A stretch of 64,000 nucleotides of DNA, from assembly GCA_943704425.1 (NCBI GenBank), contig CALSCP010001735.1, forward strand, positions 1 to 64,000. Reading direction: 5' to 3'. The DNA is from Ministeria vibrans ATCC 50519. Taxonomy: Eukaryota; Protista; Filasterea. How positions within the stretch are numbered: the stretch's first letter is position 1; every line of letters starts with the position of its first letter. The notes below the pieces were generated by a model, which saw nothing but the letters and a program-made list of their open reading frames with translations, was not told the DNA's origin and made no database searches. Position numbers and translations under genes: made by a program. Positions 10,298-38,400 of the stretch are shown one piece after another.

Positions 10298-10875
10298 CAT
10301 ACACATATACAGGACTTTCGTGGCGCACTGTACGACTTTCAGCTGATTGGTGGCAAGGCAGCGATGGTGCCCCGCTATGTTCTTGGTGTCATGTGGAGCC
10401 GTTGGTACGACCTGAGCTCGTACGATATTCGCAAGGTACGAATGAGTCCCGGATAGACATCTCTCTGACAACTCTCTCTCTCTCTCTCTCTGTCTCTCAA
10501 GGTTGTCGAGTCGTACTCTTCGCGCTCGATTCCGCTGGATGTATTTGTGCTGGACATGGACTGGCATCCCCTGCCTTGGTCTGGCTACTCCTTCGACAAG
10601 GCGCTCTTTCCATTTCCCAGCGACGCCATGGGCTGGCTTGCCCACAAGGGTACACCTGCGCCACTGCCACACTCTCACTCACTCACACACTCATTCACAC
10701 CACTCACTGTTATGTAGGGCTTCACACGGCCGCCAACCTGCACGATGCAATGGGCGTCAACTCCTTTGAGGCGACCTATCCGGCATTTGCCAAGGCTCTG
10801 GGAGTGGACCCATCGAGTGGCGCGACGATTGAATTTGACGTAGTCAACGCCACTTACATGTACACTGCAATTCTT

Positions 10876-10925
<50 letters not shown>

Positions 10926-13579
10926 ATGTGTGTCATTGATGTCTCTTGTCTCGTGCTAGGTTCAATCTGGAGGACCTTGTGCTTAAACCTGTGGCCGATG
11001 CGGGACTCGATCACTGGTGGATCGACTGGCAACAGGTATACACACACATCATTGACACACTACCACTCGCTGCAGCACACACACATATATATTATAAATT
11101 GAATATTATAATTATATAATTATATTATATATGACACACGCACGCACACACTCACACATTTATGACGCACACACATATACTCATACATACACATACTCAC
11201 ACACACATACTCACACACACGCTCTTCGGTAGGGTGGCACTCAGGGCGGATGCACGGGTGGTAAACACAACCCTACCATCCTGACGAACCAAGTGCGCGC
11301 TACAGATCCCTTCCGCACCCACGAGAACACGCGCACCTTCCTCCTCTCGCGTTTTGGTGGCCTTGGCAATCATCGCTACCAGGTGGGCTTTAGCGGCGAT
11401 GTTGCTCACTCGTGGAGCTCTCTTGCATTCCAGCCCTACTTCAGCGCCACTGCAACTAACGTCGCCTTTGGCTACTGGTCCCACGACATTATTGCGGCAG
11501 GAACCGATCATGAAATGCACACTCGCTGGATCCAATTTGGTACACTCTCACTCATGTACAAACACTCCTGACTCAATCCAAATCTTTTTTTTTATAGGTG
11601 CGTACTCGGGCGTGTTCCGCTCGCACGACGCGGGTGCTTCGGGCGGGGGTTGTGCCGACACGTCCCCTCCCTCCTGCTCCATTGTCGAAGTCTGGAAGGT
11701 GCCCACCGAGTATTTCGAGGCAAACCGGGACGCGCTTCAGGCACGCGCCGCCCTTCTTCCTTACCTTTACACGCTCGCTCGAGAGGTTTGCAGCATTATA
11801 CCCGTCCGCACTTCTCACGCACACATTGTACTCTTCTGTCCCATCTTAGAACTACGACAGTGGCGTAGGACCCACTCGTCCCATGTACTACGACTTCCCC
11901 TCCTTTGACGAGGCCTACCTCATCGACCCCAACGGCAACTACGCTCAGTACATGATTGGCTCCGACATGATGGTCGCCCCTGGTCAGTACCTTCCTCCAG
12001 TTGTTTCTTTTTTCTGTTAGTAACAATCATGCCTTACTTAGTCGTTGTGCCAATGGACTCTGACTCGCAAATGGCCACCATTGAGTTCTGGATTCCTCCC
12101 GGGATGTGGTACGAGCAGACGTCAGGTGTGCTTCACAAGGGCCCAAAGAAGCTGCGCAAGGCATACGCACTCAGCGAAGTGCCTGTCTTCATCCGCGCTG
12201 GCGCTGTCCTGCCCACTGTGCCTGTGCGCGCCGGCGACACTCTTGCCATGGCCCGCCGCCAGTTTACCAAGCTTATTGCGTCTATTTACCCCGGTGACAA
12301 CGCTGGCTCTACCTCCGTCTACGAGGACGATGGTATGTCCCTCGACTACACTTCCGACAAGGTATGTATTGGCGATGACCGTCGTTTCTTTTTTCTCACC
12401 CACACTCACATACCTTGTCCACTCCTCTCTCACACACACATACCCTCTCTCTCACACACACTTTTGTGTCTTTTTTTCTCCTTTCTCTCGTCTTTCCTTC
12501 TCTTTCTCTCTCAGTTTGAGCGTACACACATTAGCTACACAAGGAAGACAGGCACTTCCTTGAGTGTGTCCATGAGCACTACAGGGAATGGATTTGCGGG
12601 CTCTGAGGCCAAGCGTGCGTGGGAGGTGCGTGTGGTGTCATCCATGATGGCTAGCAAGGTCACCGTGGATGGCCACGAGGTGCCCTATGTTCGCTTCGGC
12701 GTGTCTGAGTCGGCAACGGATGCGTGGAGCTACGACGGTGTGACCCTCGAGCTTATTGTGGCCCTGGCCCCGCGTAACAAGAACAGTGCCGTTACTGTGG
12801 ACATTGAGACGAGTGCCACGCCCGCCGGCTTCGACTTCTCGGGTGTGCGTGGGGCTATTGCACATGCCATTCTGTGCAAGCTGACCGTGGACGCCGACCG
12901 CACCAACGTTGGCTCTATCCAGGCGACGACGCGTCTCTCCACCAGCGGCGATGCCCTTTCGTACCTCGCGGGTCACGATTCGTCCGCGTTTTCGCACGCC
13001 CTCATGGAGACAACCATGCTGCAGAACATGGCGGCGACCGAAGTGCTCAACTTGCGTCCTGACGTTGTGCCGGACAACGCGCTCAGCCAGGCGTACAGCG
13101 ACGAGCGCCGCGACACCGTCCTATGTGGCACCAATGACTGCCGCACCACCAACGTCGCCTATTCGCGCCAGCGCATTGAGGGCTACCAGCCCAAGCAAGG
13201 CGACACGGACGTGGTGCCGCTCAAGTGTTACTGGAATGCCGCCACTAACGACAACTACGTCACGACAGAGACGACTATACCCGCCGGCTACGCTCCCTGC
13301 GACTGGGACGACGGAAACGTCTTCTCGGTCGCCAAGGCTAACACGGCGGCGCTCGACGTTTACATTAGCAGCGACCACCACCACCACTTGACCACTGCGA
13401 CGCCCCAGGGACGCGACTGGGCTACCTTTAACGGTTACACTCTCCTGCACGCTGCCATTGGGCACGTCTACACCTCGTCGCAGGGAGGTTCCTCCACCTC
13501 CTCTCCTCCTGTGGGCCTTACGTCGCCCTCGCGTGCCGCTCACTGCATGTCCCTCATGAAGAACGCCAATAACGAGTAG
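9328..13579 (+). CDS. Secreted glycoside hydrolase family 31 (WWIDWQQG type) with an extra C-terminal repeat domain
   Basis: Signal peptide MMRLRLLVGLVAVACAVQVAHS; ARFTVLTDRLVRMEY; VPRYVLGVMWSRWY; VLDMDWH; nucleophile motif WWIDWQQG; SRFGGLGNHRYQVGFSGD acid/base; WSHDI; YEDDG. Confidence 0.9.
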
Positions 13580-23873: not shown

Positions 23874-25021
23874 TAATAAAATTAATAATAATTAATAAAA
23901 ATTATAGTATTATTGATATAATTATTTTGTTTGTGTGCTTGTCGTACGGAAGACTTGGTCTCGTCGATGGTGGTTGCTGCTTGTGCTTGAACCACAGCAG
24001 CGGCAGCGCGTGATCCAAGACTCGAGATCTACAAGACAACACACACAAATTTCAGATAGGTCGAGCTTGTGCACAAAGAGGGCTAGATGGTGGGTACTGA
24101 CCTGATTCCAGGGAACGGTACCGCGCGGAGGCGCCACAGCAGAAGTAGGCGCGGAGGGGGCAGGTGGCGTGGGCACCGCCGAGGCTGTCTTTGTAGCAGC
24201 AGCAGCAGCAGCAGCAGCAGCGTCTGAGCCAGTCGCACTGGGGGCGACGGCAGCTGCAGATGCTGTTTGCGCTGCTTTCTGCTTGGCCGCCTCGTCCGCT
24301 TTCACTCCAATCAGTCCGGTTTCGCTTGAGCCAAAGATATCCGTTCGTCGTTCCGCAAGTTGCTTGAGCGAACTCGACACGTTTGTTCCAATGCGATGAA
24401 CCGCCTAAGAATAGTAAACGTAAAGAGAAGGGAGGGAAGCTTGGTTGATGTTGGAATGGCGATACCTCAAGTTCGCGCTTCTCCTGCTCGTGTTTATCCT
24501 TGAGCTCCTTCCAGCGGGGGTTGAGCATGCAGACCTTCAAGTGCTGGTCCATGTCGCTCATGGGCACCTTGAGGCCACAGCGCGGGCACTGCTGCTGAGT
24601 GCCAATGCGGACTGTCTGGCCCTGCGCAGCCGCTGCTGCTGCCTTGGGGTTATAGTTCTTAACGACCTTGACAGATTCGTCGATTGTCACGCCCTGTGGC
24701 ATTGGGATGGGAGCAGGTGCCGGCAGAGTCTAGGCGCAGCAACATCAGCAACGGTGGGGAAGAAAGAGGTTAGGTTGGAAGAACAATGTACTCTCTTTCT
24801 ATCACTTTGTTCTATTGGTCCATCACGTCTTTGTTATTTCTCTCTCAATTTGATCTTCCTCTCTCGTATTGCTTTGCTTTGGTTCTCTCTCGTATCGTTT
24901 TGTTTTGGTTCTCTCTCTCTATCACTTTGTTTCTTTCTCCTTCCCTCCTCTCTCTCTCTATCACTTTGTTTCTTTCTCCTTCCCTCCTCTCTCTCTCTAT
25001 CACTTTGTTTCTTTCTCCTTC

Positions 25022-25083
<62 letters not shown>

Positions 25084-26651
25084 TATATCTACCTCCCNNN
25101 NNNNNNNNNNNNNNNNNNNNNNNNNNNNNNNNNNNNNNNNNNNNNNNNNNNNNNNNNNNNNNNNNNNNNNNNNNNNNNNNNNNNNNNNNNNNNNNNNNNN
25201 NNNNNNNNNNNNNNNNNNNNNNNNNNNNNNNNNNNNNNNNNNNNNNNNNNNNNNNNNNNNNNNNNNNNNNNNNNNNNNNNNNNNNNNNNNNNNNNNNNNN
25301 NNNNNNNNNNNNNNNNNNNNNNNNNNNNNNNNNNNNNNNNNNNNNNNNNNNNNNNNNNNNNNNNNNNNNNNNNNNNNNNNNNNNNNNNNNNNNNNNNNNN
25401 NNNNNNNNNNNNNNNNNNNNNNNNNNNNNNNNNNNNNNNNNNNNNNNNNNNNNNNNNNNNNNNNNNNNNNNNNNNNNNNNNNNNNNNNNNNNNNNNNNNN
25501 NNNNNNNNNNNNNNNNNNNNNNNNNNNNNNNNNNNNNNNNNNNNNNNNNNNNNNNNNNNNNNNNNNNNNNNNNNNNNNNNNNNNNNNNNNNNNNNNNNNN
25601 NNNNNNNNNNNNNNNNNNNNNNNNNNNNNNNNNNNNNNNNNNNNNNNNNNNNNNNNNNNNNNNNNNNNNNNNNNNNNNNNNNNNNNNNNNNNNNNNNNNN
25701 NNNNNNNNNNNNNNNNNNNNNNNNNNNNNNNNNNNNNNNNNNNNNNNNNNNNNNNNNNNNNNNNNNNNNNNNNNNNNNNNNNNNNNNNNNNNNNNNNNNN
25801 NNNNNNNNNNNNNNNNNNNNNNNNNNNNNNNNNNNNNNNNNNNNNNNNNNNNNNNNNNNNNNNNNNNNNNNNNNNNNNNNNNNNNNNNNNNNNNNNNNNN
25901 NNNNNNNNNNNNNNNNNNNNNNNNNNNNNNNNNNNNNNNNNNNNNNNNNNNNNNNNNNNNNNNNNNNNNNNNNNNNNNNNNNCTGTCTCTCTCAATCTGT
26001 CTCTCTCAATCTGTCTCTCTCAATCTGTCTCTCTCAGTCTGTCTGTCTCAATCTGTCTCTCTCACCTTCTCTTCGTCCGCCGCTGCTTTCTCCTCTGCGT
26101 TTTCTGCAGGCTTCTCTGTCGCGTTTCCTGTCGATCAATGGGGCATTTGTTAGAGACGAAGGGGGAAGCTCACCCCACCAGCTTGCCCCGTACCTGATGT
26201 GTACTCGCGCACCATGTGGTTGTAGTAGGCATGGTATGGACTTGACGGTTTGAGGAAATCGAATTTTGCGTTGTTTGCCTGTCAAAAGAAAGAGCAGCAT
26301 CCACGCGCGTGTAAGAAGTACGGACAGGCAAATGTAGTCGGAATGGAGGCAAGGCGGGGCGCGAGAGAGGGGCGAGGGGAGCGAGAAGAGAGCGAGAACC
26401 AAGAGACGACGAATTCTGTGCTGTGCGCTGGAGAAGAACGGGGCGCAGCGAGGGGCACGAGGGCGCGGCGTGAAGCACCGCCGAGACATGCGTGGGATGG
26501 CCCGTACCTCGGTTTGTGCGATCTTGTTTTGAAACTCATAACCATTTCGAGCGACAAAACTGGCTGTTTTGTCGACGACTCCCCTCACTTCGGGCGGGGG
26601 GTAGATCAGCCCGATGCCTGTCTGTCCGGGTAGCTCAGCCACATTCACCAT
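22971..26651 (-). CDS. SF3A1: Splicing factor SF3A1 (SAP114/Prp21); middle lies in an assembly gap
   Basis: SURP GLIYPPPEVRGVVDKTASFVARNGYEF; LKQLAERRTDIFG; C-terminal ubiquitin-like domain ending LAHYNV..LKERGGRKK. Confidence 0.93.
23785..23870. repeat. (AAT)n microsatellite in an SF3A1 intron
   Basis: Long perfect AAT run visible. Confidence 0.95.
24910..25060. repeat. ~39-bp minisatellite x3 merging into (CT)n
   Basis: Unit CTCTCTCTATCACTTTGTTTCTTTCTCCTTCCCTC occurs three times in tandem. Confidence 0.9.
25098..25983. other. Assembly gap (N run); smaller gaps at ~22202, ~34227-34277 and ~50634
   Basis: N characters flanked by microsatellites. Confidence 1.
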
Positions 26652-27056
26652 ATTGAGGAAAAAAGAAGAAACAAAAAATGTATCCCTTGAGAGTAAATAA
26701 GTTGAGGTACCGAATGTTTTAACAAGAATATATTTCCAAACCGATTGTGCCTTATTTGTGTGTTTTGATCTGGAAAGAGGAAGTCGGCCAATCGCTGATT
26801 ATTCGCTGTAGTGTCGAGAAGGCTTTGGAGGTTAGTGCCCACCCACAGTGTGTTGAATGTTTACTCATTGTATTGTTTCATTACTCTTCATTGTATTGTA
26901 TTTCAATACTCTACAATCTACATTGTACTGCTTTGTATTTTGTATAACATTAAAATAATAATAATAATAATACTTATTACTATTTTTATCTCCTTATACT
27001 TTTTTCCAATCTTTTTTAATTTAATTGAGGTCAGCATATTTCCATTTTCTTCTTTA

Positions 27057-29375
27057 TTAGCGCCGATCCAACTCAAGGGACGAGGCCCAACCATCGACCA
27101 TTGGCACCTGCGCCTCATGTGCCTCTTCTTCATCCTCTCTCTGTCGGAGCTGCATCTGACTGTCTCCACTCGCACTACGACCACCACTACTACTACTAGC
27201 AGTACGATCTACACGCAGACTATTGGCCGCTGCTAAGCGGCGACGAACAACCACCAAAAGAAGGAGCGAGAGGAGTGCAACAGCGGCGACAGCGCCCACT
27301 GCAACACCCACGACCTGCCAAGTGGACAGTGTTGTGCTACCACCACCCGTGAGTCCACCACTCGAACTCACTGTGTACACACTGAATGAGGACACACACA
27401 GCGTCGCAATGCCACTTGTCATGTTCACGCGCGTCGGTGCGACAGGTTGCCAGTCATCCGACGACTCACTGCTTGCACGCAGAAACACAAGCGTGAAACC
27501 AGTCTCCAAAGCACTAGCATTGAATGCCATCTCAATGCACACTGACTCGCTCAGCACCGTTCCGTGCGGCAGCAACACCAAGTAGCCCAGTGCAAGGGCT
27601 GTCGTCGCCGTTGCGTCCGACACCGCCGTCTTGTCCACCAGTGCCGCAGAGACGACAATCGAGGCGTTGTTCAGCTCCCGTGCGCCCGTGGGTATGCGCA
27701 CCGTGACGCTCGAGTCTACTTGCAAGATAACTTCGCCCGTCCGCTCGGTCGCGTTGACAGGCACAGACACAGCTGACGCACACACACGATTGTTGACCAA
27801 CACGTCGGTGGACGTTGCGCACGAGCACTCAAACACCGAACCAACGACTGTTGTGCAGACAGCACCCGTGTGACAAGGAGACGACGCGCACGCATCCACC
27901 GGCGTCTCACAGTGCACGCCCGTGAAGGAAACAGCGCACTCACATGTGATACTAGCCACACCATCGCGACACACACCTTCGTTCAGACAGGGCGACGACC
28001 CACACTCGTCAACGTTCTCAGTGCATTGCACGCCCACAAAGCCATCGGTACAATTGCAGAAAATCCACACACCAGACGCGACATCGACAAGACACGCACC
28101 TCCATTGGCACACGGTGACGAGCTGCACCCGTCAATGGCAATGTCACACTGAGCGCCGGTCAGAGCCGCGCCACACGCACAGACATACTCATAGGGTGTG
28201 GTCTGCACACACGTACCGCCACCACACTGGGCGGACACACATGGATCAAGCTGCTGATCACACGTGTCTCCATGGTGACTAGACGTGCACTCGCACTCCC
28301 ACGACGTCCCATTCACTGCCACACAGGTGCCACCATTGGTACACGGGCTGCTATCACAGACGGTGCCAAGGAACACGTCGCACTTTGCGGCCGAATAGCC
28401 CGCCGAGCATGAACACTCAAACGTGCCCACACTTGAGCCTTCCGCACACGTACTACCATTAGCACACGGAGACGACGCACACTCATTGATGTCCTCCGTA
28501 CACTCAGAACCAGTCCAGCCGACAGTGCAGATGCACGCAAACGCGCTGGAACCGTCGACACACGTTCCGTTGTTCTGGCAGGGTGACGACACACACTTGT
28601 CCATCGCGGTATCACACGCGTCGCCAGTCCACCCGACAGCGCACTCGCAGCCATAGAAGAAGCCTTCGCCGTCCTCGTCGTCCTCCTGACACGTCGCTCC
28701 GTTAGCACAAGGCGATGATGCACAGGGTTCGTAGCGGACGACCGCAAAAACGTACAGTCCCTCGCCACACACCATCAGCACACCCGTCGTCGCATTCCGC
28801 TCAAACACCGCGTCCACGTCGCTCCCATCATCCGCCGTCATCTGTAGGTCAACCCAGGGAGCGCCGTCAGTGGCGCTTGCCGCTCCAAGCACAGTCATGT
28901 GTGTGAGCCAGGTGCCAAGCAGCTCGGCTCCCTGAACAAACACACATATTTGATCGGTGTATGCTTCGCCGGCCAATGTCACAACGGTAATGTTGTTTCC
29001 GCCCACCAGCGCAGTGTTCGACGGCAACGGAGTCCCATTGTCCTCGATCCACGCTGGCAGCGACACCATCGTGGCATCTAGCACATCGTCACTCGTCCAC
29101 ACTTCGGGCAAGTCATTTTTTACGAGAACACTGCGCGCAACAACCTTGATCGTCTCCGATGCATCTGTCGTTGCCTCATCAAATTCACTAACTGACCCCG
29201 CAAGTGCACGACGCGAAACTTGTCGCAACTCCTCCACTTCGCGACGTGTCACGACTCGGCGACGACGACGAAGAGGGGTGCGCCGCCGCCGCCGCCGACG
29301 AAGTGTAGTTCGTCGTCGTCGGCGCAAAACACGCGAGCGACGGCGCGTCGTATATCGACGCCTTGCAATGTAGAC

Positions 29376-29418
<43 letters not shown>

Positions 29419-32400
29419 GCATTGGACCAGCTGACTCGGCGCCGAACAGCGAGCGCTCGACGTCGCGTAGGTACTGGCAGTGGAGCTCGTCGTCGGCGCC
29501 GCTCGTTGTACCTGCATGTGGTAGCGGATGCACGCAGGTCACGGGCATCGCATTCGCAACGGAACGAAAGTGTGCCCGTCACAATGCACTCGGGAGTGCC
29601 TTCACAAGAACTGTCAACGCAAGTACACGCGCCTCCAACACCACACGGATTGCGCTGTGTCTCACACACCGCGCCAGAGTACAAGATGGGACAACGACAC
29701 CTATATCCTGGGAAATCTGGCACGCAGGTACCGCCATTGCGACACGGCGTGCTCAGACACGGCTCGATGAGACTCTGACATTGAGAGCCAGTTGTGTCTA
29801 TCGGGCAGACACACAATTCACAGTGTCCGCTCGTGGCAGAGCGAAGACTGCAGGTGCCCCCATTGCGGCATGCGTAGCTTGCCACCCCACTTCCTAGGCT
29901 CACTCGTGCCAACCAGGCCCCGCGCGAGTCTGCTGCACCAACAAGGAAGCCCGGTGCGCTCACGAGTGGCACGATCGAAAGTCGACCAACACTTGGTCCC
30001 CTCATACGTAAACTGCCAACCACCCTTCCCGCAACACAGGACGCTTTGCTTAGAGCACACTGAAAAAGCAACACCGTGCCGTCAGCTGTATGACGCATCA
30101 CAATAAACGCCGAGCCAAAAGCCGCTACGATGCGAGGCCAGGTACCTTCGGCGCGTCCCACACGCACGTCAAAACAATTTGTTCCCGTAAACTCACAGCT
30201 CGTCATCACAAGCATTTCGTCGCCGCCACCACCAGTGTTACCGCCGCTGCTCCATAGACTCGCCGCTAGCACACGGCGCGTCGTAGAATCAGTTGCGACA
30301 GCCGCATGACGCACAGTTGTGCCAAAATCGCCCCGTGTACTAATAACCATCGCCGACTGCACAACTCCCTGCGAGGTCGTGGACACGGATATAATAACAA
30401 GCTGCCCTCGCCAAATATCGGCGACAAAAGCACGTAGACCGTTCTGTTCGCTTGCAACGTCCGGCACTCCGTACACGTTTGAGGCGACCGTGTCACTGAC
30501 TGGCAATGCGCCATTTGAATTGCCGGCAAAGGCAATGACGTTGGCACGCAAGCGATCAGCCTCGCTGCACACAGTCGAAATCTTACCATGCGCAGCAGCA
30601 TACATTACACGCCCGCCAGCAGTACTAACCATTGCCGGTGAAATAGCGACAAGATCAGCGCCATTAGGAGCACTGCCAGAATAGACTGCCGTGCCACATA
30701 CACCATCGCTGCCTTGCTGGTCGGCTGTCGGGCGTGCCGGAGTCTGCCCAAGACCATAGACTGCACCCGACGCCGCTGCCGCAACCACCCGGGGGCCGAC
30801 TAGTTTCCCGGTAGGATTGGGTGTGTTCACTTGTACGATTGTGTCGCATGTCAGATTCGCGGTACAAACAGCCGTTGTACTGCGGAGCTGAGGTATAGCA
30901 CGAGGAAAAGCAAGCTGCTCCGAGAGTACGGCGTACACAGAGTCAGACTCGGCATTTACGCGACTTAGGGAAATGTGGGTAGCCGAGCTTGACGACATCG
31001 CTGGCGCAGTCAATGCAAGACGCCACTGAGAAGTGTGCCAGCTGGCGGCCTCACAGCGCGCACCATGCCGTCCAAAGGAACATTCGCAGCGAATCGTGCC
31101 CGCGCCGGCCAGACATCGCCCTCCCGGTCCACACGCGTCAACTGTGCACAAATCGAGAACTCGTTCACAGCGTGTGCCGGTGAATCCATTGGCACACACA
31201 CACGAAGGCGTACTGCCAATGCTGTAGCATGTACCTCCGTTGAAGCACATGCCCGCACATATGCTGCACTCGCTCATTAGCACTGTCACATCGAGCTCTG
31301 TGTTCACCACTGAAACAACAGTGTCAGTCAGTTGAGGTCGGTTCCGGGCGCTGGCAAGCATTGTTGCTCCAGAGCGAAGCGCGCTCATGCCCACCAGACC
31401 ACGAGCACTCAGGTTCAATTCAAGGCAACCGGTTGCGTTACGCTGACAGCGGAACACGGTGCGTGGTAGATCGACTGCTGCCTGAGGAGCCACAGTAAAG
31501 TCCACCGCGACGCCGGACACAGCTTTGACTGCATTAATAGATGCAGACGCTTCTGCCAAGGTCTCATTGCGCGAAGCAATGTGCTGCCACGCAAAGAACA
31601 AGTCGCCACTCGAAGAGCCCATAGAACTCACAAACACAAGCGGCACAACCGGCGAGGAGGGCACAGTCACGTGACTCATCAGGGTGCAGATGACCGCAGT
31701 ATTGTACACGACGGGGCACCGTAGTGCAATGACTGACAATGCCGGTGTCTGCGCAGTCAGCACCACGATCAGGCTGCTGCTGCCGGCGTCAAAATGCACA
31801 CCCGTGTGAATTGAGGACGGCAGCGCATTCCGACTCGTTTCCATCTGACTAAACGCAAAATCAGCACGCCAGTCGGACGCAATGCTGCTCGCCGCGGTGG
31901 GCGCATCAACCACAGTCGAGACAGCCGGATGGATGATGGCCACACTGATGGTATCGTTCGTCAAGATCACACAGGTCAAGAGAGCACCGGAACGCAGGGT
32001 GACGTGCAAGTGCGTGCAAAAGGGCGGAATACGCGGGTCGTTGACAAGAAGGGGGGAACCCCTGAGAGGCGTTGAGGTGACTGCAGCGGCATCGGCGGCC
32101 AGACGTGCACCCTGTTGCGTCTGTTGCACAAGCTTTACGAGGGTCAAATCACTCCATGGCAAAGCCGCTGGGTCTGTTGCAAGGGAGACAGCAACATATT
32201 GCTCGGCTGCGTCGTCCACAACAGAATCATCTATCGCAACAATGTCTTGGAACGACTGAAACGCAGCGACGAGGGTAACGCCAATGTCACAAACAACCAC
32301 GTCACTCCCGTTCAACAGACACTCGACAGCACCGAGACGTGCTTCACTGTCGGATGCGCGCAGCATCACTGCAAACCGATTACCGTACAGTTGATGCACA

Positions 32401-35400
32401 GAGCCAGTTGCAGTCCACCCCTCAACCCTGTACGCCGGCTGTGCTACGCAGGTCCAGGCTGGGGTACATCGGTCAAAATAAATGGTGGTTGCGCCCGCAG
32501 AGAAAGGGGCACCACGGAAGACAACTGCACCGCTACTCACGGGAAACACGCGTGGCTGCGCGGTAGACCTTGTCGACGGCATTCGGACGTCTACTACTGT
32601 CGCAACACAGCCGCACGTTGGCCCGAAAAACGTGGGAGGGCAAGTACAGGTGAAACTGCCAACTGTGTTGACACATGTACCGCCATTTTCGCACACATGA
32701 GGGTCACGGCACTCGTCAATGTCCCGTTCACAGTTTGCTCCGGCATAGCCAGCTGCACAGGTACAAGCGGCCGCGCCGGCGGGTCCCGCCACGCACTCAC
32801 CGCCATTCCGACAAGCGCCGTTGATCGAGCATACCGCCGAACAGTTCGTTGCGCGCCACGAAAGCCTTGATACAGTATTGTCCAGTGCGTGAACGAGAAC
32901 GTGTGCGTCGGTTGACTCCCCCCTCGATGACAACGGTGCTATTGTACGCATGGGGGTGCCGGATACGAGAAGAGTCAGGCGGTTGGAGCAGGATACAGAA
33001 GTGGTGCCAGCCAAGTCGGTTATAGAGCAAGTGGCGGTCGCCAGAGTGCTTTGCGTCCTGAACAGAATGACTAACGTGTCCGAGGGCGAGGAAGCAAAGG
33101 TGACAACCTCGGAGAATGGACCATTTCCCTCGTCGACAACACCCGACGTACATCGCAAGGAGGCTAACGTGCATACCACAATCGTTGGCCGTGGGAGAGC
33201 GCATACAATCGCCACTTTTCCGGCGTCCGCCAGGAGCTTCATTGCCGGCCCACCAGTGCACGCAACGCTTTCGACAAGGGACACGTCGACGGCGACACAG
33301 GTTGTATTTGAGAGCTGCTCCGACACAGAGCAGCGCACTACAACCACACGCGTTCTCTCAATGCTCAGCAAGACTATCACTTGCTCACGAGCAGCAAAAT
33401 ATAGCACCTGGTTCACAGTGACGTCGGCGGAGTCAGGCACAATCGAAACGGCGACAGCGATGCTTGTGCATGTCTGCGGAACAGCTTCAATCGACGTGGG
33501 GCACTGCGTGAGCAAGAGCGAAACAGATGTTCCATTTTGGTTTCGAAACTTCGTTGCAACGTACGTCACACTGCTGTCACCGTCTGCGGCACTTGATGTC
33601 GCCAGTGCCCACGAGGGCATCGCTTGACCACGACAAAATGTCTCAGGTGAATTGCCATCGCAACGTAAAATGACAGCGACGTCATCTTCTTGGCGAACAA
33701 CAGCAAATGCATTAGTGAGCGACGGTAAGGATGGCTCCAACACAGCGAGGACTTCAACAAATGGCGACTGCGTATCGTAAGCCACTTCAACGAGCTCCAC
33801 CGCCGCTTCACGAATAAGCGTCATATTTCCCGTGCCGTCAACGGCGACAATGAGGCCGGCGGTAAGACTAGCACGTGAGCTGGAAATGCTTAAAGATGAT
33901 GTGTCGAAAAGCACGGTGGAAGAGTCGACTAAGCAAACACGCTCACTGCACAGTGGTCCAGCGGTACCCGGGAGGCAGACACACGCAAAAGTCGATGCTA
34001 GGTTGATGCATGTTGCTCCAGCTGCACAAGGGTAGGAGAGGCAGCTGTCAATGCTCTTCGAGCACCGACGCCCTGTGAAAGTCGCCGAGCAGAGACACGT
34101 GTAGCCAGCGGTGGAAAGATCGTCGATGCACGTTCCACCATTCCAACACGGGTTGTTGGCACAAGCAAGAACGCACTGCCGTGTCTTAGCGTCACGCAAC
34201 ACCAGAACAGCCGAACGACTGGCGGANNNNNNNNNNNNNNNNNNNNNNNNNNNNNNNNNNNNNNNNNNNNNNNNNNNCCCCGGCTGTTTCACACGCGATA
34301 ATCGCCAACTGAGGAGCGGCGTTTGTGGCGGAGTTGACGTGACCGTTAACGACGCTCAGAAGCCGCGAGTTTGCCCCGTCGACAGCTGTGCGAATTGTGT
34401 AGCCCGAATTAGCAGTGGAGCGCTCCAGGGCGACTCTACACCGAGGGTTGCAAATAAAAATGACAAGATGGCCGGCGGTGGAAGAGATAGCAAAGCCCCA
34501 CAGAGACTGGGTGTCGTCAAGTGTAAAGGCAGCGAGGGCGAACGCATCGCTGGAAAATGGCACGGAAAACGTTTGAGAGACAGTCTGGAGAAGGGCACGT
34601 TGGCTATGTAGTGCTGTGCCAGTGCTCAGTTGCCCTATGGTCGAGCGCAACGACGGTAAAAAACTGGCAAGGTCACGCGTCACGACAGTGATGCGACGGT
34701 CAGGCCACACACGGACTACGCGTGAGCCGGAAGTTGAGCTGCTCAAAACGGACGCGCCAGAGTGCACGTTGAGAGGGACACCTGTCAAACTGACCGTCGA
34801 TGTCAATGTAATGTCGTACGAGGCGAACCCGTCAAGAAGATCAACCGAACCGCCAAGTGTCACCGATGGTGGCAAAACAAAGTTCCCCTTTGCGGCCGCA
34901 GCGAGCGTCGCCATTGAGGGAGAGGCCAGGCCAATGGGTGTCACGCTGCGCATCGACCATTTGAGGGTGCAGCCACTGAACGAGCATGTCAGCAGCTCTG
35001 TAAAGGCGCCAGCGTCGGCGCGTTGACCAAGCAATGACACGGTCATATTGGGTTCCGCCGTTGACATATATGTGCGGACGAGGTGAGATGACAAATGAAC
35101 GACGGCAAGCGAGCAGACTTTGACAGACAGTTCGCAGTCGCTCCCAGTAAACCCACTCGGGCAGACACAGCGATAAAGACCGGCAGAAACACCTTCTTCG
35201 GTGCACGAGGCGCCGTTGGAGCACGGAGACGAGGCACACTCGACAATGTTGCTTTCACATTGGGCACCGGTGAAGCCGGCGGGGCACTCGCACAAAAACT
35301 GTACAATATCGTCCAGGCATGTTCCGCCCGCAGCGCACGGCGACGACACGCACGGATCGACACGCTCTTCGCAGCGTCGTCCGATGAATTGTGATGGGCA

Positions 35401-38400
35401 CGTACACGTCCAATTACCGGAAGCGTCCGAGCATATACCGCCGTTCAGACAGGCGCCCAAGAAGCAAATGTTAAGGGCGGTCTCGCAGGCGGAGCCGGTG
35501 AAGCCAGCCGCACATGTACACACATGGGGATCCAGGGCAGACGTTGTACCGTTGATGAGCACGGGTGAACAAGATGCACCATTCTCACAGGGGTCCGAAA
35601 AGCACGAGCCAACAATCTCTGAGCAGGTGAGACCTCCGGTGATTCCATCACACTCGCATCGAGCTGCTCCATAGAGATCTTCGATACATGTAGCAGAGAC
35701 ATGACACGGCGATGACGAGCACTCGTGTATTTCAATGCCACAATGAACTCCAGTGAAACCAGGCAAGCACAAACACACATAAGGATCTTGTGCGTTGGTC
35801 GTCGCTACGTCACAAGTCGCGCCATTTTGACATGGTGACGACACACATGTGCCAAGAAACAGTTCGCAGTGCGCACCAACGTATCCAGCGACACACACAC
35901 ACGTTTTGAAGCCCAAGGTGTCCTCGGAACAGGTTGCGCCGTTTTCACATGGCGACGAAGCGCACTCTCCTCGGCGACACACGGGTTTGTATCGCGAGAA
36001 AACAGGACCCGGAATCACAGCAACGGTAGGTTGCAGCGGATGGCTCCACTTGAGCTGTAGCGACGAGACGGACACACCCTCAAAATACTCAACTTGAATG
36101 CGAACAGGGGTGCCAAGAAGGAGCGAGACGGAGGCAGAGTTCTCAGTGAGAGCAGGCGAGAACCAGCCGTCGATAAGAAGAACGCCGTTCAAGTAGAGAC
36201 GCGAGCCATCGTCGGCGACCAGAGAAAAGGAGTGCACTCCATTGGCAACTGGGCAAATGTAGCCATAAAGACGAAGTCCCCAATAGTCTGCCTCTGTCGC
36301 AGTGAAAGTGGAACCGTGGCTGAAGACATCATTTGTCTGAAACGACACTGGGCCTGACCAGGCAAAGAGCTGGGAAGGGAACGCTGCGACGTCCATGGTG
36401 GGAAAGTACTCGCTTTCCAAGCCAAACCCGTCCGCGTCGATTGCCGTCTCGCACGAGGATCCAGTGAATCCTGGCGAGCAAGCACATGCGACCGTGCTCT
36501 TCGCCACGGTGTGAGAGAAAAAATCACCGCTGATTAGGCGCCGAGCGAGACCAGGCGACGACCAAGAAAGCGCGAGACGATCGACGTCGACGCCCTCGTA
36601 ATAGTCGATGGCAATGGAGTGCAAGCCCTCCGTCAAAGTCCGTGTTGTACTGTGGTGGTCCACCGATGGATTGTGCCACTGTTGATAAACAATAGAGGAA
36701 AAACGAAGAGAACGACAAAAAAAATTAATAATAATAAAAATAATAATAATAATAACAATAATCAACGATGATAGTGTGTTACCAAATCGAATACAATGAC
36801 CCCGTCAATGTAGAGGCGGCATCCATCGTCACAGCTCAGGTACAGCGTATACGTGTCGGTTGATGGGACAGTAAGATTACCACGCAAGGCCAACGACCAG
36901 AGGTTGCAGACGGCCACACCTCCGATGGTCGCACCGCAGGCCGGCCCGAAGTGGAACTGCACTGGTCCAACTGTCGTGTAATTGCCAGAGACAGGGCCCT
37001 CTTGATGAATAGTATTCTGGTATACTTGGCCTAGAAGACCCGGTTTGACGTGTGTCGACGCGCAAGAGCCGCCATTGAAGCACGACTTGACAGCACCAGA
37101 GTTGCTGTCCTCGAGACAGGGATCACTTGTGAGAGTCTGTGCGGGCGCCGAGACATTGCCGCAAGGCTGGACAATACTGCCGACGGCACACATGCAAGCT
37201 GCGGTCTGTGTTGACGCGTACACCATAATGTTGTCGATGGCCCAAAACCAATCGTTGTCAGCGAGCAGAAATGCCCACTCGAGATCAACGTGTGTCAACC
37301 CCGCCTCGTGGGCCAGGGAGAGAATGACCTTGCGATTGTGTCCTGACCCGTTGGGTGTGTTCCAGTCGGGCATTGTGTTCGAGTCGACAAGGGCAGTCAC
37401 AGTGCCGTTTGGGAGTGTCGCTTTCACCGTCACACTAAAAGGAATTAGAAGAGGAATTAAAAAAGGGAGAAAGAAAGAAAAAAGGAATTATAATAACCAT
37501 TATCCAATCATTATACTTCAACAATTAATGCAAAAAAAAGTATGCGTGTCTCTTCCTCACCGGCTGTCAGAAGCTGGAATCCACAACGAGTCAAATGAGA
37601 CTTGGAGTGAATTAGAAACGACGTAGGCACTTGCAAAAGACACGCGTGTCCGCAAAAAGGTGTTGAACAAATTGTTTGCAACGTTGGTTCCATCACTGAA
37701 TTGATCGCCATCGGCTACAGCGATAACACCAGAGCCGAGAGTGAACCTAGGAAGTAGGGAGTAGCGTTGAAAGGATGAGGGAAATAAATTTAATATTATT
37801 ATTATAGAAGAAGAAGACGACATTTCCAATATTATAAAGTTTCTCACTGTGATCGCCCATTGTCGGCAGCTGTGGTAATCCACCATTGCTTGGAAAGAAA
37901 AGACCAACCATAAAACTCGATAGGGTTTCCGCTGGGTGTTTGGGAACGGTCTACAGTGAATCCCAATGGAGGGGTTTTCGTGTAGACAGCAGTCCCAGCG
38001 GACTCGGTCGATGAAACAGCGTCTTTGAGGACTAGTTGCTCAAAGTTCTCGTTCAAAAATGTTTCCGTGACAGCACCCGAGAGCGTGCAGGTACCGCCAC
38101 TCTCGCAAACTACGGCGGCGCACGGATCCGGATACACCGCCAAAGATGGCAAGGGCAACGTGGCAACAAGCAGAGTTATTACCAGCCCTATTGACCTCAC
38201 TGTGAGTACGAAACACGGAGTTACATCGGCAAAGGCAAAACAATAATAATAATAATAATAAAACAATTGAAAACATTATTAGAATTACAAGAATTAGAAG
38301 AAGAAGAAACAATATAATATTGGAGTAATAAATAATAAAATATTATTATTACTATAATAAAAATATTATTAGTGAAATTAATCATTTTCTGCCCAAGCCC

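What the first reader, a model, noticed from the sequence alone, without database searches (positions are those of the whole stretch)
29241..29501. Extracellular protamine-like poly-arginine segment inside the receptor
Seen: about 50 Arg in 87 residues with no Lys, Asp or Glu, in runs of 1-13 separated by short hydrophobic or hydroxyl spacers (RRRALAVRRRVSWSNASR13VYIARRRYTTRRR..). Only the R13 run is mostly pure (CGT)n; other runs mix CGC/CGG/CGA, arguing against simple slippage. It lies N-terminal of the only TM, so it is extracellular. Known: RxRR is the furin/kexin site, and poly-Arg peptides bind polyanions and penetrate membranes. Inference: either a multi-site convertase cassette that sheds the distal ectodomain and releases cationic peptides, or an electrostatic trap for bacteria, DNA or polyphosphate.
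Basis: partly seen in the sequence, partly recalled or inferred. Interest (0 to 1): 0.85.

Follow-up and report, generated by a model that had tools for sequence, protein, structure and literature searches.

The report
Real arginine-rich tract in surface receptor
A giant cell-surface protein of this protist really carries, in its outer part, an 87-residue stretch that is more than half arginine; it is transcribed, not spliced out and kept in a sister strain, and it most likely serves as a cutting site for furin-like enzymes, though this has not been shown.

Summary
It lies on the minus strand at 29241-29501: 50 Arg in 87 residues, no Lys, Asp or Glu, runs of 1-13. It sits in frame inside a 2411-codon ORF encoding a PA14/EGF single-pass membrane protein.

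RNA contigs from two studies splice the neighbouring SF3A1 introns and leave the intergenic DNA empty. The same contigs run unspliced and without indels through the tract, so it is exonic.

A sister strain (1% coding, 4.6% non-coding divergence) keeps the 3' half in the same frame. It has an in-frame 27-nt duplication and three changes that are silent only in the Arg frame.

The tract is built from short triplet microsatellites. In 25 of 27 other (CGN)n loci examined in this genome, such DNA is read as Asp, Ser, Thr or Gly.

The two exceptions led to a family of seven secreted proteins. Each has a signal peptide, a pro-region and a pure Arg run: exactly 21 residues in six members, 17 in one. 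Long poly-Arg is therefore used in this organism's secretory pathway. The genome also encodes two kexin/furin-type convertases.

My best reading is a disordered polybasic hinge cut by convertases. This is inferred and cleavage is untested. A tolerated repeat expansion remains a serious rival. Splicing, misassembly and a frameshift at the tract's 3' boundary in the near relative are refuted.

The parts
29241..29501 (-). Core Arg tract: 87 codons, 50 Arg, no Lys/Asp/Glu
   Evidence: Translation; counts and codons
29199..29516 (-). Whole low-complexity linker (106 codons, 54 Arg), from the last Cys of the EGF triple to the start of the next domain
   Evidence: RNA fold z = -1.9 only
29377..29415 (-). 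(CGT)12-CGA microsatellite encoding R13. Every short-read contig, RNA or DNA, breaks here (the tool skips 29370-29424)
   Evidence: TRF; read laying
29514..29876 (-). Three EGF-like modules directly N-terminal of the tract
   Evidence: Pfam EGF hits; coordinates
28720..29198 (-). Orphan domain directly C-terminal of the tract, predicted all-beta
   Evidence: No Pfam hit. No homologue other than the sister strain's copy in 1.8 billion representatives. No paralogue in the genome. AF2 pLDDT 39
27057..34292 (-). 2411-codon ORF carrying the tract. It continues upstream across an N gap into PA14/EGF ORFs at 34192-36765 and 36762-37433
27225..27320 (-). The only strong transmembrane segment, followed by RRR and a short tail
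   Evidence: Hydropathy scan
38132..38224 (-). Signal-peptide-like hydrophobic segment at the 5' end of the gene. The exact start codon and first intron were not resolved
27025..27056 (-). 3' UTR. RNA contigs end at 27025/27026, 32 nt after the stop codon
   Evidence: table 8

Best explanation
Shown: the tract is a genuine, transcribed, unspliced, in-frame stretch. It forms an Arg-rich linker (57% Arg, net charge up to +21 per 30 residues) in a giant type I PA14/EGF membrane protein. It lies between an EGF triple and an orphan beta-rich domain, about 640 residues before the membrane anchor. It is assembled from short CGN triplet arrays and changes by in-frame duplication between strains.

Inferred: because it passes through the secretory pathway, it is exposed to the organism's two kexin/furin-type convertases. 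It offers them 20 overlapping R-x-[KR]-R sites and 40 overlapping Arg-Arg pairs, and the rest of the ORF offers no R-x-[KR]-R site. The most likely working is therefore a polybasic processing hinge. The receptor would be cut there into a distal PA14/EGF part and a roughly 710-residue membrane-bound stub, as Notch is at its S1 site. The short spacer peptides and Arg residues would be trimmed away or left as cationic ends.

I put about 0.9 on 'real exonic Arg tract' and about 0.4 on cleavage being its main role.
For: Exonic:
- RNA runs X1, X3 and X5 skip the SF3A1 introns (26127-26192, 26278-26506) and give zero depth over the intergenic DNA.
- X1 and X3 contigs run 27025-29369 and 29425-32000 with no joint and no indel.

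Frame:
- One ORF runs through both flanks.

Conservation:
- Sister-strain contig L022 holds the 3' half in the same frame. The spacers and run lengths there are kept.
- It differs by a 27-nt tandem duplication, three CGG>CGT changes silent only in the Arg frame, and one Thr>Asn change.

Topology:
- A single transmembrane segment and an N-terminal signal-like segment.
- An N-A-S sequon sits just before R13.

Enzymes:
- Peptidase_S8 + P_proprotein genes at C2383 (777-aa ORF) and C257.

Precedent in the same genome:
- Seven secreted paralogues carry KR sites followed by an Arg homopolymer at the junction of the pro-region and the Cys-rich domain.

Translatability:
- Yeast YHR131C has 14 consecutive Arg and is not a ribosome quality control target (PMC8102910).
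Against: - No protein-level data of any kind.
- A cleavage site needs 4 residues, not 87.
- Polyarginines are known furin inhibitors as well as substrates (title of PMC4482483; otherwise my own knowledge). A long tract could therefore block rather than feed the enzyme.
- The tract uses more of the rare CGA codon (14 of 54 Arg codons, against 10% elsewhere in the gene). It also varies in length between strains, which looks like weak constraint.
- No orthologue outside one near strain could be found, so long-term conservation is unknown.
Confidence: 0.4

Rival explanations
1. Tolerated repeat expansion with no function of its own. CGN microsatellites grew by slippage and duplication in an inter-domain linker where length and composition matter little, and the Arg frame is an accident of where they arose.
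For: - Each run is a nearly pure triplet array.
- The strains differ by a 27-nt tandem duplication and by repeat-unit changes.
- The residues just after the tract evolve fast: 5 of 13 amino-acid changes fall in the first 29 of 731 residues.
- Gene-wide dN/dS is about 0.5 (my rough estimate).
- Excess of the rare CGA codon.
- (CGN)n arrays of 10 or more units occur at 314 overlapping positions in the genome.
Against: - In 25 of 27 other such loci the longest ORF reads the array as Asp, Ser, Thr or Gly (one ambiguous Val/Asp). The Arg frame is therefore normally avoided.
- The only other Arg-frame cases are under clear length selection.
- The three single-base strain differences in the runs are silent only in the Arg frame.
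- A stretch with +21 net charge in 30 residues in a translocated protein is unlikely to be neutral.
Confidence: 0.3
2. Uncleaved polycation. The tract stays in the mature receptor and binds polyanions (own glycocalyx, prey or bacterial surfaces, nucleic acid, polyphosphate) or membranes.
For: - The charge density.
- The exact-length R21 modules in seven secreted paralogues argue for a role beyond a cleavage site, since a cut site does not need a fixed length.
- Polyarginine is cited as binding phospholipid bilayers strongly (a reference title listed in PMC11878562, seen; that paper was not read).
Against: - With two convertases present, survival of 40 Arg-Arg pairs through the Golgi needs explaining.
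- The receptor tract, unlike R21, varies in length between strains.
- No binding data.
Confidence: 0.15
3. Relic of a compensated frameshift. An ancestral Ser/Thr/Ala/Pro-rich mucin-type linker, which is the +2 frame of the same DNA, is now read one base off as Arg. This concerns origin and could coexist with any of the functions above.
For: - With the gene's own codon table the +2 frame scores +21.6, which equals a typical true-frame window (21.7, sd 7.6). The Arg frame scores -38.8, like an off-frame.
- The +2 frame is open across the tract.
- Elsewhere in the genome the same repeats are read as Ser, Thr or Asp.
Against: - The score comes from the repeats themselves, because NCG codons are the preferred Ser/Thr/Ala/Pro codons. 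On spacer codons alone the two frames tie at +0.10 and +0.06 per codon.
- The sister strain already has the Arg frame at the 3' junction.
- The strain differences are silent in the Arg frame, not in the +2 frame.
Confidence: 0.12
4. Artefact: an in-frame intron, a misassembly or two sequencing errors.
For: - Only that no single short-read contig crosses the 55 nt at 29370-29424, so the exact repeat number is unverified.
Against: - RNA contigs enter the repeat from both sides, and no GT-AG joint is seen.
- The one candidate donor/acceptor pair (29511/29192) gives a 320-nt interval, which is not a multiple of 3 and would break the frame.
- DNA and RNA from three studies agree base for base outside the repeat.
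- An independent strain has the same frame.
Confidence: 0.03

Closest known systems
Furin (S1) cleavage of Notch and other EGF-repeat receptors (own knowledge)
   Same: A large type I EGF-repeat receptor with polybasic sites in the ectodomain between the EGF arrays and the membrane. The genome has S8 + P-domain convertases.
   Different: Notch has one R-x-R/K-R site inside a folded heterodimerisation domain. Here there are 20 overlapping sites in an 87-residue disordered tract. There are no LNR, NOD or ANK domains, and cleavage is not shown.
Multi-site prohormone and pheromone precursors cut by Kex2/PC enzymes, such as the yeast alpha-factor precursor (own knowledge)
   Same: Short peptides separated by basic sites in a secretory protein.
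   Different: Those use KR/RR pairs with conserved product peptides. Here the spacers are 1-7 residues with no sign of being products, and the basic runs reach 13.
Protamines
   Same: Composition: more than 50% Arg, in runs separated by short neutral spacers.
   Different: Protamines are small, free, nuclear sperm proteins that bind DNA. This tract is an internal segment of a protein of over 3000 residues on the lumenal side of the membrane.
Natural and reporter polybasic tracts (yeast YHR131C with R14; R12 stalling reporters; PMC8102910)
   Same: An Arg homopolymer of 13-14 residues encoded by CGN codons.
   Different: Those are cytosolic or nuclear proteins. Here the tract must also pass the ER translocon and is flanked by ten more Arg runs.
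R21 module family of the same genome (found here; not known to me from the literature)
   Same: A long Arg run followed by aliphatic residues, in the lumenal part of a signal-peptide protein, upstream of a Cys-rich domain.
   Different: No sequence homology. R21 is a single pure run of fixed length using preferred CGT/CGC codons. The receptor tract is a mosaic of variable runs with many CGA and CGG codons.

Membership tests
Proprotein-convertase substrate | R-x-[KR]-R or dibasic motif | tested here: met
   20 overlapping R-x-[KR]-R motifs and 40 RR pairs in the tract, none elsewhere in the ORF
Proprotein-convertase substrate | Site exposed in the secretory pathway lumen | tested here: inconclusive
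   A single C-terminal transmembrane segment and an N-terminal signal-like segment. The start codon and first intron were not resolved
Proprotein-convertase substrate | Cognate enzyme (S8 + P domain) in the organism | tested here: met
   C2383 ORF of 777 aa with Peptidase_S8 at 1.6e-41 and P_proprotein at 1.4e-22. A second locus lies on C257
Proprotein-convertase substrate | Cleavage products observed | not testable with these tools
   No proteomic data were available
Spliceosomal intron | Absent from mature RNA, GT-AG bounded | tested here: not met
   RNA contigs cover it with no joint, while the neighbouring SF3A1 introns are skipped in the same runs
Microsatellite-derived homopolymer or low-complexity region | Pure triplet arrays and length change between strains in multiples of 3 | tested here: met
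   TRF arrays, codon list, 27-nt tandem duplication in L022
Protamine | Small free nuclear basic protein | tested here: not met
   The tract is internal to a 2411-codon ORF with EGF, PA14 and a transmembrane segment
Mucin-type Ser/Thr linker (read in the +2 frame) | The Ser/Thr frame is continuous with the flanking domains | tested here: not met
   Stop codons bound the +2 frame on both sides. The mRNA has no indel relative to the genome
Notch | LNR/NOD/NODP and ankyrin domains | tested here: not met
   Pfam finds only EGF-type and PA14 families

The most novel reading that the evidence does not exclude
Long poly-arginine modules are a lineage-specific working part of secreted and surface proteins in this protist. 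Seven paralogous signal-peptide proteins keep an Arg homopolymer of exactly 21 residues in six copies and 17 in one. Their codon interruptions differ and their flanks are saturated at synonymous sites. The receptor's 87-residue tract would be a second, independent use of the same device. The function would go beyond a cleavage site, for example a length-measured polyanion or membrane binder, or a convertase regulator.
Probability: 0.3. Interest if true: 0.8.

Novelty: new variant of a known kind. Interest (0 to 1): 0.55.

Why it matters
Arginine homopolymers and Arg-rich low-complexity regions are among the rarest in eukaryotic proteins. A fungal survey finds low-complexity regions and homopolymers depleted in Arg (PMC11878562). 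The longest Arg run highlighted in a yeast proteome survey is 14 residues (PMC8102910). Polybasic tracts are also used in the laboratory to stall ribosomes, and by my own knowledge strong positive charge hinders passage through the ER translocon.

Here an expressed surface receptor carries +50 charges in 87 residues on its outer side. The same genome keeps exact R21 runs in a secreted family. If these tracts work, they give a natural system for three questions: how cells translate and translocate extreme polycations, how convertases deal with them, and what an extracellular polycation does for a unicellular eukaryote. If they do not work, the tract is a clear case of a microsatellite tolerated in the least-tolerated frame.

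Tried and rejected
1. Orthologue searches.
- A word-indexed search of the region around the tract returned only EGF proteins of animals.
- The non-EGF domain after the tract gave nothing in the 1314-4180 aa length class.
- The 750 residues upstream gave only EGF hits.
- A full HMMER scan of 1.8 billion representatives found one true relative, P0121. This is the sister strain's copy, wrongly begun at a GTG inside the tract by a gene caller.
- Its 90% identity cluster has one member.
- I could not obtain the 5' half of the tract in that strain.

2. Paralogue of the tract or of its neighbouring domain in the same genome: none.

3. RNA structure: the fold is very stable (-149 kcal/mol) but little more so than shuffled sequence (z = -1.9), so I claim no structural element.

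4. Frameshift origin: the whole-tract codon score favours the Ser/Thr frame. This vanishes on spacer codons, so the test is inconclusive.

5. Candidate splice sites 29511/29192: the interval is 320 nt, not a multiple of 3, and no RNA uses them.

6. The 'skips 1231' joint 28493>29725 in X3 rests on 21-23 shared letters of another EGF transcript and lacks GT-AG ends. I treat it as a k-mer link, not a splice.

7. AF2 of the post-tract domain gave pLDDT 39, so I ran no fold search. Pfam at E up to 10 gave nothing for that domain. The membrane-proximal domain gave a sub-threshold ZU5 hit.

8. Metagenome scan for the R21 family: no relatives.

9. A literature search for the sister strain's run accession found nothing. 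The organism's name was not available to me.

Full report
**What is there**

The plus strand at 29241-29501 reads as a Thr/Ser-rich peptide. On that strand the 87 codons hold 50 Arg and no Lys, Asp or Glu, in runs of 5, 3, 3, 13, 3, 3, 1, 5, 7, 5 and 2. The wider linker at 29199-29516 holds 54 Arg in 106 residues.

The rest of the 2389-residue ORF is 4.9% Arg. Its highest net charge in any 30 residues is +5, against +21 in the tract. All 20 R-x-[KR]-R motifs of the ORF lie in the tract.

R13 is (CGT)12 followed by CGA. The other runs are mostly small pure arrays, (CGA)3, (CGA)4, (CGG)5 and (CGT)3.

**The gene**

The tract lies in frame in a 2411-codon ORF at 27057-34292 on the minus strand. 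This ORF continues upstream, across an N gap, into ORFs at 34192-36765 and 36762-37433. Pfam finds many EGF-type modules and PA14 domains and nothing else.

The only strong hydrophobic segment is at 27225-27320, followed by RRR and a short tail. A signal-peptide-like segment lies at 38132-38224, though I could not fix the start codon or the first intron. This is a type I topology, so the tract, about 640 residues before the anchor, is on the outer (lumenal) side.

The tract sits between three EGF modules (29514-29876) and an orphan domain (28720-29198). That domain has no Pfam hit, no paralogue in the genome and no homologue beyond a sister strain. A single-sequence AF2 model of it was too poor to use (pLDDT 39).

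**Is it exonic?**

Runs X1, X3 and X5 behave as RNA. Their contigs skip two introns of the neighbouring SF3A1 gene (26127-26192 and 26278-26506, with GT..AG ends on the minus strand). They give zero depth over the intergenic DNA, and they end at 27025/27026, 32 nt after the receptor's stop codon. The DNA run X6 covers everything.

Contigs of X1 and X3 run 27025-29369 and 29425-32000 without joints and without indels. They extend 35-38 letters into the (CGT)n core from both sides. Only the 55 nt at 29370-29424 are not bridged by any contig, RNA or DNA, as expected for a 39-nt perfect repeat in a 31-mer assembly.

The one plausible donor/acceptor pair (29511/29192) spans 320 nt, which would break the frame, and no RNA uses it. 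The odd 28493>29725 joint in X3 rests on about 21 shared letters of another EGF transcript and is not a splice.

The tract is therefore in the mRNA, in the Arg frame. The other two frames are closed by stop codons just outside it.

**A near relative**

The full HMMER scan found P0121, a 731-residue 'protein' that a gene caller began at a GTG inside the tract. Its contig L022 is DNA from another sample, because it carries the intergenic spacer and the unspliced SF3A1 exon and intron.

Against the window:
- The 732 shared codons differ at 22 positions: 9 silent, and 13 replacing if the caller's Met-for-Val at the GTG start codon is not counted. There are no indels.
- The 1 kb of non-coding DNA downstream is 95.4% identical, with 7 gaps.

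L022 starts inside the (CGT)n core and holds the 3' half of the tract in the same frame as the downstream domain. All the spacers and run lengths there are kept. The differences are one Thr>Asn change, three CGG>CGT changes and a 27-nt tandem duplication that adds nine residues, five of them Arg.

The three single-base changes are silent in the Arg frame and would be replacements in the other two frames. They may, however, be repeat-unit turnover rather than point mutation. The 5' half and more distant relatives remain unseen.

**How unusual it is in this genome**

CGN arrays of 10 or more units are common, at 314 overlapping positions. I examined 27 other loci. In 25 the longest ORF across the array reads it as Asp, Ser, Thr or Gly, with one ambiguous Val/Asp case. 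A protein search with the tract found no second copy.

The two exceptions, on contigs C327 and C942, turned out to be paralogues. Searches with their first exon found seven in all: C942, C1441, C2584, C327, C1696, C642 and C1865.

Each first exon encodes, in order:
- a signal peptide;
- a mildly acidic pro-region of about 70-140 residues after the signal peptide (net charge -3 to -11 counted over everything before the Arg run), with conserved RPEKRGAD, LQASLDEAALSG and IVKRWG motifs;
- a pure Arg run;
- LIVCPPG and a GT donor.

The next exon of the C327 copy matches Ephrin_rec_like Cys-rich repeats.

The Arg run is exactly 21 residues in six copies and 17 in one. Each copy has its own pattern of CGC or CGG interruptions in (CGT)n, and in the copies compared the flanking codons differ at most synonymous sites. 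That pattern means selection on the Arg run and its length, not recent copying. No relatives were found in JGI metagenome contigs.

This family is not homologous to the receptor tract. It does show that this organism translates, translocates and keeps long poly-Arg in secretory proteins.

**Mechanism**

The genome has two kexin/furin-type genes with Peptidase_S8 plus the P domain. A lumenal, disordered stretch with 20 overlapping furin-type motifs and 40 Arg-Arg pairs is the only such target in the protein. My best reading is a polybasic processing hinge that splits the receptor into a distal PA14/EGF part and a roughly 710-residue membrane stub, by analogy with Notch S1. This is inference, and I put it at about 0.4.

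Four points count against it:
- A cut site needs four residues, not 87.
- Polyarginines also inhibit furin (title of PMC4482483; otherwise my own knowledge).
- The tract is rich in the rare CGA codon: 14 of 54 Arg codons, against 10% elsewhere.
- Its length varies between strains.

Rivals:
- A tolerated repeat expansion without a function of its own (0.3).
- An uncleaved polycation that binds polyanions or membranes (0.15). The fixed length of R21 speaks for roles of this kind in the family.
- An origin as a frameshifted Ser/Thr/Ala/Pro linker (0.12, and compatible with any function).

For the frameshift origin, the whole-tract codon score favours the +2 frame: +21.6 against -38.8, where true-frame windows average 21.7 with sd 7.6. 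The signal comes from the repeats themselves. On spacer codons the two frames tie, so the test is inconclusive. RNA structure is not special (z = -1.9).

**What is known**

Fungal low-complexity regions and homopolymers are depleted in Arg (PMC11878562). A yeast proteome survey highlights one protein with 14 consecutive Arg and finds that such natural tracts are not targets of ribosome quality control. It also states that +12 or more in 30 residues is extremely rare in most proteomes (PMC8102910). I found no description of Arg tracts of this size in ectodomains, but the searches were few.

**Verdict**

The convertase reading is plausible but untested. I class the tract as a new variant of known kinds, namely a polybasic processing site and a microsatellite-born low-complexity region. 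Its moderately high interest comes mainly from the R21 family found alongside it.

Noticed in passing
G000 contigs C942:33468-33854 (L048), C1441:123353-123748 (L049), C2584:8016-8423 (L050), C327:138-716 (L051/L046), C1696:70834-71205 (L052), C642:50061-50411 (L053), C1865 about 10750-11190 (L054): A family of seven secreted proteins. The first exon encodes a signal peptide, a mildly acidic pro-region with conserved KR sites, an Arg homopolymer (exactly 21 in six copies, 17 in one), then LIVCPPG. Ephrin_rec_like Cys-rich repeats follow in the C327 copy. Different synonymous interruptions and saturated flanks imply selection on run length. No Pfam hit for the pro-region and no metagenome relatives.
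   Followed up: partly
Genome-wide; examples L004-L045: (CGN)n arrays of 10 or more units occur at 314 overlapping positions. In 25 of 27 loci examined they are read as poly-Asp, Ser, Thr or Gly inside long ORFs, so coding triplet microsatellites are common in this genome.
   Followed up: partly
window 26034-26664 (minus strand): 5' end of an SF3A1-like (Surp) gene. RNA contigs confirm introns at 26127-26192 (66 nt) and 26278-26506 (229 nt). The spacer to the receptor's 3' end (26665-27024) is AT-rich and untranscribed.
   Followed up: yes
window 25000-25983 and about 34230-34280: Runs of N (assembly gaps). The second gap interrupts the receptor ORF, so its full length and the frame link between the two large ORFs are not established.
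   Followed up: no
window 27258-27800 (minus strand): The membrane-proximal domain gives a sub-threshold ZU5 match (E 0.021, 15.5 bits against a cut-off of 21). The domain right after the Arg tract gives none, and the two are barely alike (E 0.39).
   Followed up: partly
L022 (Logan contig of another sample) against window 26000-29400: A sister strain or species with 1% coding and 4.6% non-coding divergence. Five of the 13 amino-acid replacements cluster in the 29 residues just after the tract. P0121 is a gene-caller artefact that starts at a GTG inside the tract.
   Followed up: yes
G000:C2383:2033-4363 (L003:91-2421) and G000:C257:30302-31624 (L002:1438-2793, minus strand): Two kexin/furin-type proprotein convertase genes (Peptidase_S8 + P_proprotein). 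The C257 gene is split by at least one intron.
   Followed up: partly
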